64,000 nt of DNA, from IMG/VR virus record IMGVR_UViG_3300027899_000001, positions 310,001 to 374,000 of that record. One strand, 5' to 3'. A model generated the notes under the pieces. The model was not told the origin of the DNA. It saw only the letters and a list, made by a program, of their open reading frames with translations, and made no database searches. Below are positions 23,300-51,128 of the stretch, one piece after another. Each line of letters starts with the position of its first letter. Within the stretch, counting starts at the first letter, position 1. Both the position numbers and the translations under genes were made by a program.

Positions 23300-23302
23300 G
23301 TG

Positions 23303-23387
23303 TGGAAGGTAAGGGATTCGAACCCATGTGAACTATTCGCCTCTTGCTTGTAAAGCAAGTGCTCTGAACCAGCTGAGCTAACCTTCC
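23303..23387 (-). tRNA. trnV-TAC: tRNA-Val(TAC) with long variable arm
   Basis: CTTGC-TTTACAA-GCAAG then AGGCGAATAGTTCAC extra arm. Confidence 0.8.
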
Positions 23388-23632: not shown

Positions 23633-23641
23633 TAAAATTTG

Positions 23642-23726
23642 CGTTTGGTGAAGGATTCGAACCTTCGATCGGATTTCTCTCGACGGATTAACAGTCCGTT
23701 GTCGTGGGCCACTTGACTAACCAAAC
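23642..23726 (-). tRNA. trnN-GTT: tRNA-Asn(GTT) on Tyr-like class II body
   Basis: ACGGA-CTGTTAA-TCCGT, long V-arm, G73. Confidence 0.8.
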
Positions 23727-24931: not shown

Positions 24932-24937
24932 TTTTTG

Positions 24938-25020
24938 CACGTAAGGTAGGATTCGAACCCACGAACTCTTTCGAGGCTGGTTTTGGAGACCAGTGCCTTT
25001 AACCACTCGGCAACTTACGC
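24938..25020 (-). tRNA. trnW-CCA: tRNA-Trp(CCA) with long variable arm
   Basis: CTGGT-CTCCAAA-ACCAG plus CTC-GAAA-GAG arm, Ser/Leu-type D-arm, G73. Confidence 0.8.
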
Positions 25021-30736: not shown

Positions 30737-31951
30737 TTATTTTATATTAAGTTGATATTTACAAAATTCTATCATTTTTTCATCTCCTGTATGTTTTCCT
30801 TCTGAATCAGACAATTTAATACAAGGTACCCATTCATCGTCAGGATCAGGTTTTGCTGCAATTAGTTTAATAACCATATTAAGTGGGTTAACTCCAACAT
30901 CATTAGATAAATTTGTGCCTATTCCCATTGCGCATTTAATTTCTTTATTACATGATTTTGTTAATTCAATTGCAAGATCAGGATTAAGATTATCTGAAAA
31001 AATTATAGTTTTATCATTGGGGTCAATTCCCATACTTTGATAATGTTTAATAACTTTTTCTGCAAAATGAAATGGATTTCCACTATCATGTCTTACACCA
31101 TCAAAAAGCTTTGAGAATTTTTTTCCAAATGATTTAAAGAATGATTCTGTTGTAAATGTATCTGTAAGAGCAATTCCAAGATCACCTTGATAAACATTTG
31201 ACCAGTTTTCAAGAGCTAAAAAATTTGCTTGTTTAAATCCATATTTTGCAGCATGAAACATAAACCATTCATGTGCATGAGTTCCTATTGGAGTAAGATT
31301 AAACATATGAGCAAAGTGTACATTAGAAGTTCCATTAAAATTATCTCTCATACTAAATGCTAAATCTTCTACAACTTCTTTTTGATTTTCATATGAATAT
31401 CTTCTACGAGTTCCAAATTCAGAAATCTTAACTCCATGATTATTAAATAATGCAGCTTTTTTTAGATTATTTTGTTCTCTTTCTACTCTTGAATTTATTT
31501 TTTCTCCCGTCATTTTAAAATACAATTCAGATATAAGAGCAAGAAGTGGAACTTCCCAAAGAATTGTACGATACCAGTAGCCTTCTACAGTTACTTGAAG
31601 TTCACTTCCATTTTGTATAACTCCAACTTCTGAAGGATTATATCTATATCCTGCCAAAAAATCAAAATACGCAGGATCGATATATTTACATTTAGTTTCA
31701 AAGAAGTGTTTTTCTGCAGTCAAAAGTTTAAGAGAAGACATATGAGAAATTTGTAATCTTAGTTCTTCTGCAAATCCTTCTGGAAAATTTACTTTTGAAC
31801 GAACTATTAATGCATATTTAACTTTTGCTCTTGGAAAAAGTTTTAACACTGCATTCATCATACTAAATTTATAAAGATCGTTATCGAGTATTGATGTAAT
31901 TATAGGTTCCATTTTATATTTTTTTAGCATGAAAATAAGTGACTCCATCAA
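30737..31951 (-). CDS. pncB: Nicotinate phosphoribosyltransferase
   Basis: SILDNDLYKFSM, EFGTRRR, GTHAHEW, LTDT, GVRHDSG, KLSDSEGK. Confidence 0.95.
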   Translation of the reverse strand: MMESLIFMLKKYKMEPIITSILDNDLYKFSMMNAVLKLFPRAKVKYALIVRSKVNFPEGFAEELRLQISHMSSLKLLTAEKHFFETKCKYIDPAYFDFLAGYRYNPSEVGVIQNGSELQVTVEGYWYRTILWEVPLLALISELYFKMTGEKINSRVEREQNNLKKAALFNNHGVKISEFGTRRRYSYENQKEVVEDLAFSMRDNFNGTSNVHFAHMFNLTPIGTHAHEWFMFHAAKYGFKQANFLALENWSNVYQGDLGIALTDTFTTESFFKSFGKKFSKLFDGVRHDSGNPFHFAEKVIKHYQSMGIDPNDKTIIFSDNLNPDLAIELTKSCNKEIKCAMGIGTNLSNDVGVNPLNMVIKLIAAKPDPDDEWVPCIKLSDSEGKHTGDEKMIEFCKYQLNIK

Positions 31952-32381
31952 TTTCTGTCATATCAAGAATTTTAAATTGATATGCACTAAATAATGCTGT
32001 TACAATTCTTGGTGTTAACGATCTATCAATTTTATTATCTAATAAATTAAATATAACATCTATAAGCTTTCCATATAATATATGAGTTTTTAAACTCAAC
32101 ATAGGTTTACTTGCTATAAATTTTCCATATACATAAGTATTCTTTTTTAAAAGATTATTAAAATCTTTAATAGTATCGTCTAAATATTTAATTTCATTTA
32201 ATTTTTTAAGATGAACAAGCGTTTTAATTCCTTTTAGTTCATCTTTATCATAGAAATAAAAATGTTTTCCCGAAAGAAATAAAACTTTTTCATCTTTAAC
32301 TTTTTTATGTTTTTGCACATATGCATGCATAACATGATCATATGTTTCATCTTTATATTGAATATCATTAAAACTTTTCAT
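31914..32381 (-). CDS. Hypothetical protein
   Basis: ORF track. Confidence 0.55.
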   Translation of the reverse strand: MKSFNDIQYKDETYDHVMHAYVQKHKKVKDEKVLFLSGKHFYFYDKDELKGIKTLVHLKKLNEIKYLDDTIKDFNNLLKKNTYVYGKFIASKPMLSLKTHILYGKLIDVIFNLLDNKIDRSLTPRIVTALFSAYQFKILDMTEIDGVTYFHAKKI

Positions 32382-32383
32382 TA

Positions 32384-32749
32384 TTATCTTATTCTAAATG
32401 TATCAAAAAATGTTCTAAACGATAGTCTTTTTTTCAAAATTATTGTTTCAGATACGTATTGAGTATCATTTTCATAATATTTTGTTCCTTTAGGAATTAT
32501 GAATTTAAATACAGTTAAGTAAGAATGAGCATCATCTGCCGCAATTTTAAAACTTTTATATGAATGATAGCCTATGTTAATAGAAACTTGATCATAATAA
32601 AAAGTAGCATCAAATTCTACTTTTTTATTTAAAAGATTTTTAGTATATTGAAAATCTGTAAACCAAGATATTCCTCTTCTAGTCATAGTTTTATAACAAA
32701 CTATATCTTTTTTTGCTGTTTTAAGAACATTTTTTCCAGTAAAACACAT
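32384..32749 (-). CDS. Hypothetical phage protein
   Basis: TAKKDIVCYK...GYHSY...FIIPKGTKYY. Confidence 0.6.
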   Translation of the reverse strand: MCFTGKNVLKTAKKDIVCYKTMTRRGISWFTDFQYTKNLLNKKVEFDATFYYDQVSINIGYHSYKSFKIAADDAHSYLTVFKFIIPKGTKYYENDTQYVSETIILKKRLSFRTFFDTFRIR

Positions 32750-32760
32750 ATTTTTAATTT

Positions 32761-33665
32761 TTAAAAGATTAGACTTCCTTCATCATCCCAACGACAATAT
32801 AATTTACTATTTTCTCTTAAGATAACATATTTAAGAGATTCGTTATTGCCTTTAGACATACAATCATCATCAATAACAACTGACATTCCATTTATAGAAT
32901 AAACTTTTGCACCAAACGGAAGAGTATAAAGAAATTCACCATTTCCCGCCTTTTTAGGAAACATTCTCTCAGTTCCTATATATGCATTTTCTCCTGTAAT
33001 ATATTTCTTAATAGCACTTATAGTTTCGTCTTTACATGCATTTTCTTTAACCCATTCACCTTCGTCATTTATAATAAATCCATCTTTATCTAACTCATAA
33101 TATATTTTTCTAAAAGTAACTTGATTTGCACCAAGAAATTTACATCTAGCTATAATTTCTTTTGGAGTATGATTATCATATTCTTTTAACATATTAAGAC
33201 TTAAACGAATATTAAATCCTCGTGATTTAAGTAAAGAAATTAATTCTGATAAGTTAAATTTTAATTTTTTAGAAACTCCAATTATATTTAAATTATTTTC
33301 ATCAGAAAAAATATCAGCAACAGAAAGACTTATCGTATTTACTTGAAGTTTTTGTAATAATCAATATTATCATCATCTAATAATACTCCAGTAGTTTGTA
33401 ACTCAACATTAGGAAATGGATAATTTAAATCTTTAAATAAAACAGATAAAACTTTTAAGAAATTTGTATTTTGCAAAGCTTCTCCTGTTCCTGTAAGAAT
33501 ACAAGTATTTACTCCATTCATTACAGCATACTTAATACGTTTTTCTATTTGAATATACATAAAAGTATCTTCATATGGAGAATCATGCATTCTACTTACA
33601 CAAAATGGACATTTATTTACACAACTTTTTGTAGGAACTACGATAGAAATTGTCTAAATGTTCAT
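32761..33665 (-). pseudogene. Radical SAM protein interrupted by TAG at codon 4 and a 1-nt frameshift near 33360
   Basis: MNI*TISIVVPTKSCVNKCPFCVSRMH (CxxxCxxC), LTGTGE, ELQTTG; continues in the -1 frame LQKLQVNTISLSV into ORF 32761..33192. Confidence 0.75.
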
Positions 33666-33731
33666 ATATTAATTATTATTGTGTAAATATAATACTAATT
33701 TCTGAATTAAAAAAATATTTTGCTATTTATT

Positions 33732-34382
33732 TTAAATATTTCCTATAAAAGAAAGTGTAAGAGAATCTACATAATAAACTTTAGCTTGTGTAAAAGCTTC
33801 TATAGTTTCTGACAAATCTGAATTTATTGATTTACACGCATCTTCAATAACATATGTATTAAAACCTTCCATTGCTGCATCTATTGCAGTTTCTTTCACA
33901 CAATAATCTAGAGCTAAACCACATACGTAAACTTCAACTACATTTCTTTCATTAAGAAAATCTTGAAGTTTTTTAGGAGCATCTGGATTTATTATTTTTG
34001 ATCTATCAAATGCACTATAAACATGATTATTCCTTTCCATGCCTTTTTTAAAGATATAAAAATCTTTTTTGCATTTTGATAAATTCAGATCTGGATGAAA
34101 TGAAGCACCTAATGTATCTGCTACACAATGATCAGGCCAAAGAATATCTTTTTCTCCATTTTCTCTTACGTAACTATCGTAAACAGAAGCTCCGGGATGT
34201 TGTGAGGCGAAAGCATCCATTTCTGGATCATGCCAATCTTGTGTAAATATAACTAAATCAAATCTTTCAAGGAGATCATTAACTACGGGTACAATTTTGT
34301 CTCCATCTGGTACTGCTAGTGATCCTCCAGGGCAAAAATCTCTTTGCAAATCGATCACTATTAATGCTTTTTTCTTTATCAT
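33732..34382 (-). CDS. pncA: Nicotinamidase
   Basis: VIDLQRDFCPGGSLAV, TQDWH, WPDHCV, GLALDYCVKETA. Confidence 0.95.
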   Translation of the reverse strand: MIKKKALIVIDLQRDFCPGGSLAVPDGDKIVPVVNDLLERFDLVIFTQDWHDPEMDAFASQHPGASVYDSYVRENGEKDILWPDHCVADTLGASFHPDLNLSKCKKDFYIFKKGMERNNHVYSAFDRSKIINPDAPKKLQDFLNERNVVEVYVCGLALDYCVKETAIDAAMEGFNTYVIEDACKSINSDLSETIEAFTQAKVYYVDSLTLSFIGNI

Positions 34383-34538
34383 ATCATCTTATAGTTTGAA
34401 TTTCATATTCATCATATCCATCTCTTGATTCATCTGAATCTATACATACAATTTCTAATCCAAATGATTGTAAAGCGTCTGATATATTGTCTACAATTTC
34501 ATCAGCTCTATCATCATAATCTACTCTAAATTTTGATT

Positions 34539-35474
34539 TCATAATTCTTCCTTTTTATTTTTAACATATCTATTGTATATACTATTTTCATTTTCTATTA
34601 TATCGTGTCTATATATATTGACAGGATTATTTCTTTTGAATTGAGATTTTAAATGTCGTTGAATGACAGAGTGTTGACGCATTTTATTAATTTCATCCAT
34701 ATATACTGCATTAACAGTTGGTGAATGTTTTTCAATAAAGTCTAAATATTCTTTAAGTATTCTATCAACTTCTTTATAACCATCTCTAGAATTTCCTGTC
34801 CAGTCTGGCATTATTTGTCCAAGATCTCCAAGATTTGTAACTCCAAGGCCATCAGTTGCAAGTGCAGTTATCGTATTTATTATTGTACTTCCTGCTTCAT
34901 AATTTCCAGCATATTCATTCATAGTTAACCATTCTGCCATATCATATACTTCTGTTTTCCAAAGATTTTGTATCATACCATAATCACCTACATCACCATG
35001 AAGAGTCCAAAAACCAAGAAGAAATTCTGTATAATTATCAGTAGAAAGAACTATTCCACGATGATATGAAGCTAAATCATACAAATAAATCATACGCAGT
35101 CTTGCTTTAAGATTTCCATTACGTATACGACTTGATGAACCTTCAGGATTAGGCGCATGAAACAGCATATTAGATTCCATTTTGGAATACATAAAATTAT
35201 ATTCTTCTTCAACGCTATGCTCTAAGAATTTTGTACAAAATACTTTTCCTGTTAATTTGGCTCTTTCTAATTCTTCTGGTTGATTTGAACTTACTGGCAA
35301 ACTTCTTCCTATAAGTGGAATATTTAATTCATCACAAACTGGTCTAGCAAGTGCTGCGCAAAGACAACTATCTATTCCACCTGAAATCCCTATAATAAGA
35401 GACTTTATATTATTGTTTGTAATATACAGACTTAATTCTTTTCGAATATTCGATACTGCTATTTGATAATTCAT
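34539..35474 (-). CDS. nadE: NH3-dependent NAD synthetase
   Basis: GISGGIDS, NLKARLRM, STDNYTE, FWTLHGD, KTEVY. Confidence 0.9.
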   Translation of the reverse strand: MNYQIAVSNIRKELSLYITNNNIKSLIIGISGGIDSCLCAALARPVCDELNIPLIGRSLPVSSNQPEELERAKLTGKVFCTKFLEHSVEEEYNFMYSKMESNMLFHAPNPEGSSSRIRNGNLKARLRMIYLYDLASYHRGIVLSTDNYTEFLLGFWTLHGDVGDYGMIQNLWKTEVYDMAEWLTMNEYAGNYEAGSTIINTITALATDGLGVTNLGDLGQIMPDWTGNSRDGYKEVDRILKEYLDFIEKHSPTVNAVYMDEINKMRQHSVIQRHLKSQFKRNNPVNIYRHDIIENENSIYNRYVKNKKEEL

Positions 35475-47824: not shown

Positions 47825-47839
47825 AATTTTAAATATTTG

Positions 47840-47920
47840 TGCCGCCGGAGGGACTCGAACCCCCAAGCCTTTCGGGTCTGATCTACAGTCAGGTGAGCCA
47901 ACCAATTGCTCAACGTCGGC
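47840..47920 (-). tRNA. trnY-GTA: tRNA-Tyr(GTA)
   Basis: Loop CT-GTA-GA, V-arm CC-GAAA-GG. Confidence 0.85.
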
Positions 47921-49366: not shown

Positions 49367-49426
49367 ATTGTTTTTATATTATATATCTAAAAATTAGTCG
49401 AGTTTTAATTATTCGAACAAAAAATG

Positions 49427-49506
49427 TAGGGTGAACGGGATTCGAACCCGCGTAAAAACTCCTGATCCCAAATCAGGCGAGATAAACCTGGCTCCTCTAC
49501 CACCCT
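49427..49506 (-). tRNA. trnP-TGG: tRNA-Pro(TGG)
   Basis: CCTGA-TTTGGGA-TCAGG. Confidence 0.85.
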
Positions 49507-51020: not shown

Positions 51021-51045
51021 TAGCTTTTAACTTTTCCCCCATTTG

Positions 51046-51128
51046 AGACCGAGAAGGGATTCGAACCCTTGTGAGCTTTCGCTAATGGTTTTGCAGACCA
51101 TCCTTTTCAACCACTCAAGCACTCAGTC
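51046..51128 (-). tRNA. trnC-GCA: tRNA-Cys(GCA) with long variable arm
   Basis: ATGGT-CTGCAAA-ACCAT, AGC-GAAA-GCT arm, U73. Confidence 0.85.

What the first reader, a model, noticed from the sequence alone, without database searches (positions are those of the whole stretch)
32761..33665. Radical SAM gene with an amber codon at position 4 plus a -1 frameshift
Seen: ATG AAC ATT TAG precedes an intact CxxxCxxC motif; the frame later shifts by one base near GAT TAT TAC AAA AAC and continues to 32761. The early TAG parallels Pth2 (codon 3) and the micro-leader (codon 4). Inference: part of an amber-gated regulon (Gln would fit the context, unverified), or simple pseudogenisation or assembly error.
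Basis: partly seen in the sequence, partly recalled or inferred. Interest (0 to 1): 0.6.

Follow-up and report, generated by a model that had tools for sequence, protein, structure and literature searches.

The report
Broken phage radical-SAM gene with amber
A radical-SAM gene in a 405-kb freshwater phage really has a stop codon (TAG) at codon 4 and a one-base deletion one third of the way in; the deletion looks like a recent break, while the TAG may be readable because the phage carries its own amber-suppressor tRNA and keeps a conserved early TAG in a neighbouring peptidyl-tRNA hydrolase gene.

Summary
On the minus strand the gene reads ATG AAC ATT TAG (TAG 33656-33654), then an intact CxxxCxxC motif. 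Frame 0 stops at 33341-33339, and the -1 frame is open from 33360 to 32761. Three assemblies give the same letters: the 405-kb contig, an IMG/VR contig, and a Logan contig at depth about 40.

The window lies in a complete, standard-code huge phage: 405,016 bp, 29% GC, 39 tRNAs, one of them tRNA(CUA).

More than 25 orthologous loci carry one intact ORF of about 300 codons starting MNIQ(T/S)ISIVVPT. The TAG replaces a nearly invariant Gln, which is CAA in most orthologs. The frameshift is a missing T in GAT(T)TTA. It has no slippery site there, no downstream structure, and no conservation. It is a lineage-specific lesion, not a programmed frameshift.

The conceptual protein shows no relaxed constraint (1 of 102 near-invariant residues changed; ordinary branch length), so the break is recent.

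The "amber-gated regulon" idea is only partly supported. The Pth2 gene (44524-44874) has an early in-frame TAG in 17 of 18 related loci. In all but two of those 17 loci a tRNA(CUA) lies in the DNA held. That early amber is specific to Pth2. The radical-SAM TAG is unique to this phage, and may be either a suppressible Gln codon or a second decay lesion.

The parts
33681..33721 (-). Promoter-like repeated element. Its -7-like box TATTATATTTACA lies at 33694-33682, and the ATG follows 16 nt after the box.
   Evidence: It is 100% identical over 37-41 nt to copies at 26605-26565 and 51201-51165. There are about 25 related copies, mostly on the minus strand of the tRNA-rich region. Logan contigs break here.
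33663..33665 (-). ATG start codon of the radical-SAM gene.
   Evidence: It is the first ATG after the promoter-like box. Orthologs start at the homologous ATG, reading MNIQ....
33654..33656 (-). In-frame amber codon TAG at codon 4, followed by A.
   Evidence: It aligns with a Gln conserved in at least 90% of sequences. Among 21 other viral loci the codon is CAA in 18, CAG in 1 and GCT in 2. In 5 metagenomic loci it is CAA.
33600..33623 (-). CxxxCxxC [4Fe-4S]/SAM cluster motif (C15, C19, C22).
   Evidence: Pfam PF04055 at 34.3 bits.
33339..33665 (-). Frame-0 segment: 108 codons, ending in an 8-codon out-of-frame tail and TAA 33341-33339.
   Evidence: It aligns to residues 1-96 of the orthologs at 73% identity.
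33358..33362 (-). Site of the 1-nt deletion. The sequence reads GAT TA where orthologs imply GAT TTA (..NID LLQKL..).
   Evidence: Alignment A1, columns 120-135; tblastn junction. The -1 frame has TGA 33363-33361 immediately upstream, so the shift must lie here for the conserved Leu-Leu to be read.
33348..33354 (-). C AAA AAC, a near-miss to the -1 slippery heptamer A AAA AAC. It is the only conceivable rescue site.
   Evidence: Sequence. No stimulatory structure lies downstream (z = -0.70). A shift here would read YYKN in place of the conserved LLQK.
32761..33360 (-). -1 frame segment: 199 codons plus TAA, the C-terminal two thirds of the radical-SAM protein.
   Evidence: It is 67% identical to P0002 over its full length. 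There is no ATG, GTG or TTG before 33192.
43926..43999 (-). Phage tRNA with anticodon CUA (amber suppressor), the only suppressor among the 39 tRNAs.
   Evidence: ARAGORN. Homologous suppressor tRNAs lie next to Pth2 in relatives. It is not similar to the phage tRNA-Gln genes.
44524..44874 (-). Pth2-family peptidyl-tRNA hydrolase gene with TAG at codon 3 (44868-44866). It is the conserved amber-gated gene.
   Evidence: Pfam PF01981, E = 1e-9. No ATG stands anywhere in the ORF downstream of the TAG. The early TAG is conserved in 17 of 18 related loci.
30737..35474 (-). NAD-salvage gene neighbourhood around the radical-SAM gene: NadE 34539-35474, isochorismatase/nicotinamidase-like 33732-34382, and NAPRTase 30737-31951.
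   Evidence: Pfam hits. The same synteny is seen in L005-L009.

Best explanation
This is the local copy of a conserved, uncharacterised huge-phage radical-SAM enzyme. It has a MoaA/viperin-like fold and is usually embedded in an NAD-salvage and tRNA gene region.

The copy has very recently been broken by loss of one T (GAT TTA to GAT TA, at about 33360). As written, the genome can make only a 107-residue N-terminal fragment, or at best traces of full-length protein through rare spontaneous -1 slippage.

The TAG at codon 4 most likely predates the break. It would be a Gln codon (CAA to CAG to TAG) that was tolerated because the phage supplies its own tRNA(CUA). Under that reading, translation of the gene depended on the suppressor, as it conservedly does for the neighbouring Pth2 gene.

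Shown: both lesions; that they are unique to this phage; the Gln alignment; the presence of the suppressor tRNA; the conserved Pth2 amber; and the lack of relaxed constraint.

Inferred: that the TAG was translated as Gln, the order of the two events, and the loss of function.
For: Sequence and three concordant assemblies support both lesions.

Orthologs in 26 other loci are single intact ORFs with a sense codon at position 4.

The deletion maps to GAT(T)TTA, because the -1 frame encodes the conserved LLQKLxVNTISLS directly after a TGA. There is no canonical slippery heptamer, and the downstream fold gives z = -0.70.

The gene shows no decay beyond the two lesions. Only 1 of 102 near-invariant residues is changed, against 0-8 in intact homologs. 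Its terminal branch of 0.46 is typical. Its promoter-like element is intact.

The TAG looks like a Gln codon. Position 4 is Gln in at least 90% of homologs. In this gene, codons one step from a stop number 80 for TAA, 50 for TGA and only 22 for TAG, and none of the other six Gln codons is CAG. A random first nonsense mutation would rarely be Gln to TAG.

Suppression is available and is used nearby. The genome has one tRNA(CUA). Pth2 carries TAG at codon 3 with no alternative ATG. That early TAG is conserved in 17 of 18 related loci, at varying codons 2-10, and a tRNA(CUA) lies in the same locus in 15 of the 17. Every one of these TAGs, including the radical-SAM one, is followed by a purine, against 16 of 32 for terminator TAGs.
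Against: No ortholog of the radical-SAM gene has a TAG, even in relatives that carry the amber-Pth2 and tRNA(CUA) module. L039 and L046 lie on the same contigs as L018 and L017.

Two rare lesions in one gene are what decay produces.

My rough likelihood estimate for 'suppressed Gln codon' against 'second decay lesion' is only about 1:1 to 7:1.

The suppressor tRNA does not resemble the phage's tRNA-Gln genes, so the inserted amino acid is unproven.

TAG still terminates 32 of 364 long genes, so suppression cannot be complete.

All sequence evidence probably comes from one sample. Raw reads and RNA or protein data were not available.
Confidence: 0.55

Rival explanations
1. Plain pseudogene. Both the TAG and the 1-nt deletion are inactivating mutations of a dispensable accessory gene, and the TAG has nothing to do with the suppressor tRNA.
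For: Early amber codons in relatives are confined to Pth2. Genome-wide there is no sense use of TAG inside genes. Two lesions in one gene are typical of decay.
Against: There is no other sign of decay: 1 of 102 near-invariant residues changed and a normal branch length. CAA to TAG needs two steps, or a rare CAG ancestor; CAG makes up 12.8% of Gln codons in the genome and 0 of the 6 other Gln codons in this gene. TAG is the least likely nonsense outcome here (22 one-step codons against 80 for TAA and 50 for TGA). It falls exactly on a Gln, at codon 4, followed by A, which matches the pattern of the conserved Pth2 ambers.
Confidence: 0.3
2. Fully functional doubly recoded gene. Amber suppression at codon 4 plus programmed -1 ribosomal frameshifting at C AAA AAC (33354-33348) together throttle synthesis of a potentially harmful radical-SAM enzyme.
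For: A -1 shift anywhere between 33360 and 33342 gives a full-length product. C AAA AAC is one base away from the A AAA AAC motif of IS1 (my own knowledge). The C-terminal frame is perfectly preserved. The promoter-like element is intact.
Against: The heptamer is not canonical, and no downstream structure stands out (z = -0.70, 53 of 200 shuffles fold as well). No ortholog is frameshifted. A shift there would replace the nearly invariant Leu-Leu with Tyr-Tyr. The -1 frame still encodes the ancestral LLQ upstream of that site, which marks a simple deletion.
Confidence: 0.07
3. Sequencing or assembly artefact, or a minority allele fixed by the assembler.
For: All assemblies probably derive from one freshwater sample. 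Contigs hide rare variants.
Against: Three assemblies agree with 0 differences at word depth about 40, and no variants are listed. The deletion lies in a run of only 2-3 T, not a long homopolymer. The TAG is a substitution, not an indel.
Confidence: 0.03
4. The ATG-AAC-ATT-TAG is a 3-codon mini-ORF, and the enzyme initiates downstream at a near-cognate codon (ATT at codon 6 or ATC at codon 8), so no suppression is needed.
For: Near-cognate ATT and ATC codons follow the TAG. In Pth2 the TAG is often followed by ATH.
Against: Orthologs conserve MNIQ and start at the ATG. The model's first strand begins at residue 5. The perfect co-occurrence of early TAG with tRNA(CUA), and a mid-gene TAG in the LR756501 Pth2, argue that these TAGs are read through.
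Confidence: 0.05

Closest known systems
Stop-codon recoding (TAG read as Gln, 'code 15') in Lak, crAss-like and other phages, proposed to regulate late genes (Borges et al., bioRxiv 10.1101/2021.08.26.457843; Peters et al., PMC9523058)
   Same: A low-GC phage of a probably standard-code host carries its own tRNA(CUA). An in-frame TAG aligns with Gln. The idea is that translation of TAG-bearing genes waits for the suppressor.
   Different: Here the genome is otherwise standard code: 91% ORF coverage under code 11, no mid-gene TAG enrichment, and TAG still ends about 9% of genes. Only two genes carry a TAG, each within the first four codons. They are a translation-factor gene and a metabolic gene, not structural or lysis genes. 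No phage release factor was found.
prfB (RF2) autoregulation through an early in-frame stop codon (my own knowledge)
   Same: An in-frame stop early in the gene for a translation factor makes its synthesis depend on the balance between termination and an alternative decoding event.
   Different: prfB uses UGA at codon 26 and a +1 frameshift that senses RF2. Here the event would be UAG read-through by a phage tRNA, and the conserved case is Pth2, not the radical-SAM gene. No experiment exists.
Programmed -1 frameshifting at A AAA AAG / A AAA AAC (dnaX, IS1, IS3 family; my own knowledge)
   Same: Two overlapping frames could be joined by a -1 shift, with an A-rich near-heptamer inside the overlap.
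   Different: The heptamer is imperfect (C AAA AAC). There is no stimulatory structure and no conservation. Alignment shows a simple 1-nt deletion upstream of it.
MoaA and viperin (radical-SAM enzymes that act on nucleoside triphosphates)
   Same: They are the best structural matches to the AF2 model of the intact homolog P0002: MoaA 2fb2/1tv7 at TM 0.58-0.61 and viperin 6q2p at TM 0.52-0.55. They share the N-terminal CxxxCxxC and a partial TIM barrel.
   Different: Identity is only 12-16%. No NCBIfam family comes near its cut-off, and there is no PDB sequence hit. The conserved C-terminal part (...LKYVILRENGKLYCRWDDEGSLIF) is family-specific and poorly modelled. The substrate is unknown.

Membership tests
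Radical SAM superfamily (PF04055) | CxxxCxxC cluster motif and a Pfam score above the gathering threshold | tested here: met
   C15/C19/C22 are present. The score is 34.3 bits against a cut-off of 29.5. Intact homologs carry PF04055.
Radical SAM superfamily (PF04055) | A complete (partial) TIM-barrel core encoded in one open frame | tested here: not met
   The core is split between frame 0 (to 33339) and the -1 frame (from 33360). Orthologs have a single ORF.
Programmed -1 ribosomal frameshift | Slippery heptamer X XXY YYZ at the shift site | tested here: not met
   There is nothing slippery at GAT|TTA. The only near-miss is C AAA AAC at 33354-33348.
Programmed -1 ribosomal frameshift | Stimulatory downstream structure | tested here: not met
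   The minimum free energy is -13.3 kcal/mol against a shuffle mean of -11.5, giving z = -0.70.
Programmed -1 ribosomal frameshift | The frameshift is conserved in orthologs | tested here: not met
   The 21 other viral loci are single ORFs with no in-frame stops. In the 5 metagenomic loci only the start region was read, and it is intact.
TAG-recoded (code 15-like) phage | Phage-encoded tRNA with anticodon CUA | tested here: met
   The tRNA lies at 43926-43999 on the minus strand.
TAG-recoded (code 15-like) phage | Many genes with in-frame TAG and low coding density under code 11 | tested here: not met
   ORF coverage is 91% under code 11 against 93% with TAG read as sense. One weak mid-gene TAG candidate was found, against 7 for TGA and 21 for TAA. 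TAG terminates 32 of 364 genes.
TAG-recoded (code 15-like) phage | In-frame TAG aligns with Gln in homologs | tested here: met
   Gln is conserved at position 4 in at least 90% of sequences. This rests on a single codon.
TAG-recoded (code 15-like) phage | TAG is actually translated (protein evidence) | not testable with these tools
   No RNA, proteome or raw-read data were available.
Pseudogene | Disabling lesion absent from orthologs | tested here: met
   The 1-nt deletion and the TAG are unique among 26 loci.
Pseudogene | Relaxed constraint (excess changes at conserved sites, long branch) | tested here: not met
   Only 1 of 102 near-invariant residues is changed, and the terminal branch is 0.46, close to the median. 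If it is a pseudogene, it is a very young one.
Amber-gated Pth2 plus tRNA(CUA) module (proposed here) | Early in-frame TAG conserved across orthologs, with a suppressor tRNA in the same locus | tested here: met
   This holds for Pth2. It does not hold for the radical-SAM gene, whose TAG is not conserved.

The most novel reading that the evidence does not exclude
Huge phages of this clade carry a conserved two-part circuit: a tRNA(CUA) and a Pth2 peptidyl-tRNA hydrolase whose own mRNA has an amber codon within its first ten codons. Pth2 output would then report and track suppressor activity, an amber 'sensor' analogous to the prfB stop codon. In this phage a second gene, the radical-SAM enzyme, has been recruited to the same amber gate. 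The gate would then be an evolvable post-transcriptional switch in an otherwise standard-code virus, an early stage of code change caught in the act.
Probability: 0.3. Interest if true: 0.75.

Novelty: new variant of a known kind. Interest (0 to 1): 0.45.

Why it matters
The radical-SAM gene by itself is an ordinary, recently frameshifted accessory gene, and it should not be annotated as a programmed frameshift.

Checking it exposed something of wider interest. In a standard-code huge phage and at least 16 related phage loci, the Pth2 peptidyl-tRNA hydrolase gene always carries an amber codon in its first few codons and sits beside an amber-suppressor tRNA.

That gives a concrete, testable case of a stop codon used as a gate or sensor for a translation-quality-control enzyme. 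It may also be an intermediate on the path from standard code to TAG recoding, which Borges et al. postulated.

On the practical side, gene callers miss or truncate these genes under code 11.

Tried and rejected
1. Global TAG recoding was rejected. Code 11 already gives 91% ORF coverage, and mid-gene TAGs are not enriched.

2. I suspected that the many homologs called from 'MHD...' hide an upstream TAG. They do not: the upstream DNA reads ATG AAY ATH CAA, so the callers simply chose a later ATG.

3. A programmed -1 frameshift was rejected.

4. A split enzyme with independent translation of the C-terminal piece was rejected. There is no ATG, GTG or TTG in the -1 frame before 33192, and starting there would remove conserved strands.

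5. A redundant paralog that would excuse decay was not found.

6. The identity of the suppressor tRNA could not be read from its similarity to the phage tRNA-Gln genes. The suppressor tRNAs form their own family.

7. Closer relatives or other alleles were sought in phage GenBank records, IMG/VR, JGI metagenome contigs and SRA. Only the same contig or sample turned up.

8. A shared promoter specific to amber genes was rejected. The repeated promoter-like element also precedes about 25 other genes and tRNA clusters.

9. My codon-bias scan for other frameshifted genes was swamped by antisense shadows and was abandoned.

10. Sequence searches for the enzyme's function (NCBIfam, PADLOC, PDB sequences, PHROGs) gave only generic radical-SAM hits.

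Full report
**What is there**

The window is bases 310,001-374,000 of a single 405,016-bp contig. IMG/VR classes the contig as a complete virus with direct terminal repeats. It has 28.8% GC. All 39 of its tRNA genes lie in the window, and one of them has anticodon CUA, at 43926-43999 on the minus strand.

On the minus strand the flagged gene reads ATG (33665-33663) AAC ATT TAG (33656-33654). It continues TISIVVPTKSCVNKCPFCVSRMHD... with an intact CxxxCxxC motif. This frame ends ...DDDNIDYYKNFK-TAA at 33341-33339.

The -1 frame carries TGA at 33363-33361. It is then open from 33360 to the TAA at 32763-32761 and encodes LLQKLQVNTISLSVADIFSD...RWDDEGSLIF.

The first piece passes the Pfam Radical_SAM threshold.

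**Is it real DNA?**

An IMG/VR contig (3300003860_000007) is identical over about 12 kb, including both features.

The only public run that holds the region is a freshwater metagenome, probably the source sample. It yields a Logan contig that spans 31500-33710 with no differences at word depth about 39.5, with no variants listed.

A scan of JGI metagenome contigs for either allele of the frameshift site found only the 405-kb contig itself.

An assembler error is therefore very unlikely. Independent populations and raw reads were not available.

**Comparison with relatives**

The C-terminal piece finds more than 230 proteins of about 300 aa, with a best identity of 67%. Their N-termini read MNIQ(T/S)ISIVVPTKGCVNxCxFCVS.

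Many database entries start at 'MHD...', and I suspected hidden stop codons upstream. The DNA of five such loci, fetched through four of those proteins, reads ATG AAY ATH CAA, so those are merely start-codon choices by the gene callers.

In 21 further IMG/VR loci the gene is a single ORF without in-frame stops. Codon 4 is CAA in 18 loci, CAG in one and GCT in two.

The alignment shows two things:
- The TAG replaces a Gln conserved in at least 90% of sequences.
- The two window pieces abut exactly as ...NID | LLQKLQVNTISLSV, against ...NIELLKNLGVNTISLSV in homologs.

Because the -1 frame has a TGA immediately before TTA TTA CAA, the lesion is the loss of one T in GAT(T)TTA.

**Not a programmed frameshift**

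- Nothing at the deletion site can slip.
- The only A-rich near-heptamer in the overlap is C AAA AAC at 33354-33348. It is non-canonical, and a shift there would put Tyr-Tyr in place of the nearly invariant Leu-Leu.
- The 108 nt downstream fold no better than shuffles (z = -0.70).
- No ortholog is frameshifted.
- The C-terminal piece cannot be made on its own, because no ATG, GTG or TTG occurs in its frame before 33192.
- There is no paralog elsewhere in the genome.

**How old is the damage?**

I read the gene conceptually, taking TAG as one residue and correcting the frame. That protein differs from the family at 1 of 102 near-invariant columns. Intact homologs differ at 0-8.

Its terminal branch in a maximum-likelihood tree is 0.46, close to the median and shorter than the branches of its two sister sequences.

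The gene also keeps a perfect copy of a promoter-like element of about 41 nt. Its -7-like box TATTATATTTACA lies at 33694-33682, and the ATG follows 16 nt after the box. The element recurs about 25 times, mainly in the tRNA-rich region.

The gene was therefore under purifying selection until very recently.

**Is the TAG a second lesion or a readable codon?**

The genome as a whole uses the standard code:
- ORF coverage is 91% under code 11 and 93% with TAG read as sense.
- TAG terminates 32 of 364 long genes.
- In-frame TAGs with coding sequence on both sides are not enriched: 1 weak case, against 7 for TGA and 21 for TAA.

One pattern is enriched, however. I looked for 'ATG, one to eight codons, then a stop, then a coding ORF with no nearby start'. 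It occurs in 5 of 40 cases for TAG, 0 of 94 for TGA and 5 of 353 for TAA.

The two clear cases are this gene and the Pth2-family peptidyl-tRNA hydrolase at 44524-44874. That gene reads ATG AAA TAG ATA..., has PF01981, and contains no ATG anywhere after the TAG.

**The Pth2 amber is conserved**

An in-frame TAG stands within the first 2-10 codons in 17 of 18 loci, counting the window's own copy. These are:
- the homologs in the 462-kb phage LR756500 and the 735-kb phage LR756501;
- 15 of the 16 IMG/VR loci (35-99% identity), one of which is this phage's own contig and two pairs of which are near-duplicates;
- both of the two paralogs in L013.

A tRNA(CUA) lies in the same stretch of 3-5 kb in 15 of the 17 amber loci. 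The two exceptions are L015, whose contig ends just after the gene, and L004, which has only 1.5 kb of flank. The single locus without an early TAG (L023) also lacks the tRNA.

The position of the TAG wanders within a non-conserved N-terminal tail. What seems to be selected is 'an early amber', not a particular residue.

Every one of these TAGs is followed by a purine, usually A, as is the radical-SAM TAG. Terminator TAGs are followed by a purine in 16 of 32 cases. A purine in that position is, to my knowledge, the context that favours suppression in E. coli.

In relatives the early amber is specific to Pth2. The relatives that carry the module have a radical-SAM gene with CAA at codon 4; L039 and L046 lie on the contigs of L018 and L017.

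**Weighing the two readings**

For decay:
- Two rare lesions sit in one gene.
- Both are unique to this phage.

For a suppressible Gln codon:
- In this gene, 80 codons are one step from TAA, 50 from TGA and only 22 from TAG. None of the other six Gln codons is CAG, and genome-wide CAG makes up 12.8% of Gln codons. A random first nonsense mutation would be 'Gln to TAG' in roughly 1% of cases.
- The TAG falls at codon 4, in the purine context of the Pth2 ambers.
- There is no other decay.

Against that stands a low prior: no other non-Pth2 gene in this genome has acquired a sense TAG.

My rough odds are between 1:1 and 7:1 in favour of the suppressible-codon reading. I settle on the following confidences:
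- about 0.55 for 'TAG was a tolerated, suppressor-dependent Gln codon, followed by a recent inactivating deletion';
- about 0.30 for plain two-hit decay;
- about 0.07 for a functional doubly recoded gene;
- about 0.05 for a mini-ORF followed by initiation at a near-cognate codon downstream;
- about 0.03 for an artefact.

The inserted amino acid is not established. The suppressor tRNAs form their own family and do not resemble the phage tRNA-Gln genes. In the LR756501 Pth2, a second TAG aligns with Glu.

**What the enzyme is**

It sits in a conserved neighbourhood: NadE, an isochorismatase/nicotinamidase-like protein, the radical-SAM gene, NAPRTase and, further on, Pth2.

Sequence libraries give only generic radical-SAM matches.

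An AlphaFold2 model of the intact homolog P0002 has mean pLDDT 81, with a poorly modelled C-terminal 35 residues. It is closest to MoaA (TM about 0.6) and to viperins (TM about 0.5), both of which act on nucleoside triphosphates. A nucleotide-directed radical reaction is a reasonable guess and no more.

**Known context**

Phage stop-codon recoding with suppressor tRNAs, and the proposal that it times late-gene translation, are known (10.1101/2021.08.26.457843; PMC9523058; PMC13037316).

In three full-text searches I found no description of an amber-bearing Pth2 coupled to tRNA(CUA). This absence is limited to the library searched.

**Verdict**

The frameshift is an ordinary recent 1-nt deletion. 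The amber codon is plausibly, but not demonstrably, a suppressor-dependent Gln codon. The 'regulon' shrinks to one conserved gene (Pth2) plus this lineage-specific and now broken case.

Noticed in passing
window 43926-44874 (-); also L003, L004, L010-L022, L024-L025: There is a conserved module: a Pth2-family peptidyl-tRNA hydrolase with an in-frame TAG in its first 2-10 codons, beside a tRNA(CUA). It is found in 17 of 18 related huge-phage loci. The one locus without the TAG (L023) also lacks the tRNA. It may be a sensor or feed-forward gate that ties Pth2 output to suppressor activity.
   Followed up: partly
window 33681-33721 and about 25 other sites (e.g. 1686, 2828, 7133, 13306, 15658, 18371, 26578, 27864, 39074, 39723, 47256, 51174, 57742, 66692*, 72125*; * = beyond the window, in genome coordinates minus 310000): A repeated promoter-like element, AAATATTTTTTT-N4-TCA-N8-9-TATTATATTTACA, precedes genes and tRNA clusters. 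Almost all copies are on the minus strand. Its -7-like box resembles the Bacteroidota TAnnTTTG motif, which hints at the host phylum. Logan contigs break at these repeats.
   Followed up: partly
window 30737-35474; L005-L009: An NAD-salvage set (NadE, isochorismatase/nicotinamidase-like, NAPRTase) is syntenic with the radical-SAM gene, and often with Pth2 and a dCMP deaminase, across many phage contigs. This suggests the radical-SAM enzyme belongs to a nucleotide or cofactor pathway.
   Followed up: partly
window 23302-23387, 23641-23726, 24937-25020, 47839-47920, 49426-49506, 51045-51128: Several phage tRNAs that are normally about 75 nt long (Val, Asn, Trp, Pro, Cys) are called at 81-86 nt by ARAGORN, as is Tyr at 82 nt. 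Possible causes are introns, long variable arms or miscalled ends.
   Followed up: no
L004 1501-1830 (LR756501): The Pth2 homolog of the 735-kb phage has a second, mid-gene TAG, which aligns with Glu of the window protein (HPEIAKEW against FP*IYEQW). TAG must therefore be read through in that phage. The residue it stands for (Gln or Glu) is open.
   Followed up: no
window 44437-44463 (-): A tiny ORF, ATG ACA CAC TAG ATT AGA TCT CCC TAA, lies between Pth2 and the next gene. There is no evidence that it is more than chance.
   Followed up: no
L013 1740-2480: One relative carries two Pth2 paralogs in tandem. Both have an early TAG (M*IGSKLIVITRRDL and MK*TNQKLYVITRRDL).
   Followed up: no
L023 3209-3531: The only Pth2 locus without an early TAG or a tRNA(CUA) carries a tmRNA-like gene next to Pth2 instead.
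   Followed up: no
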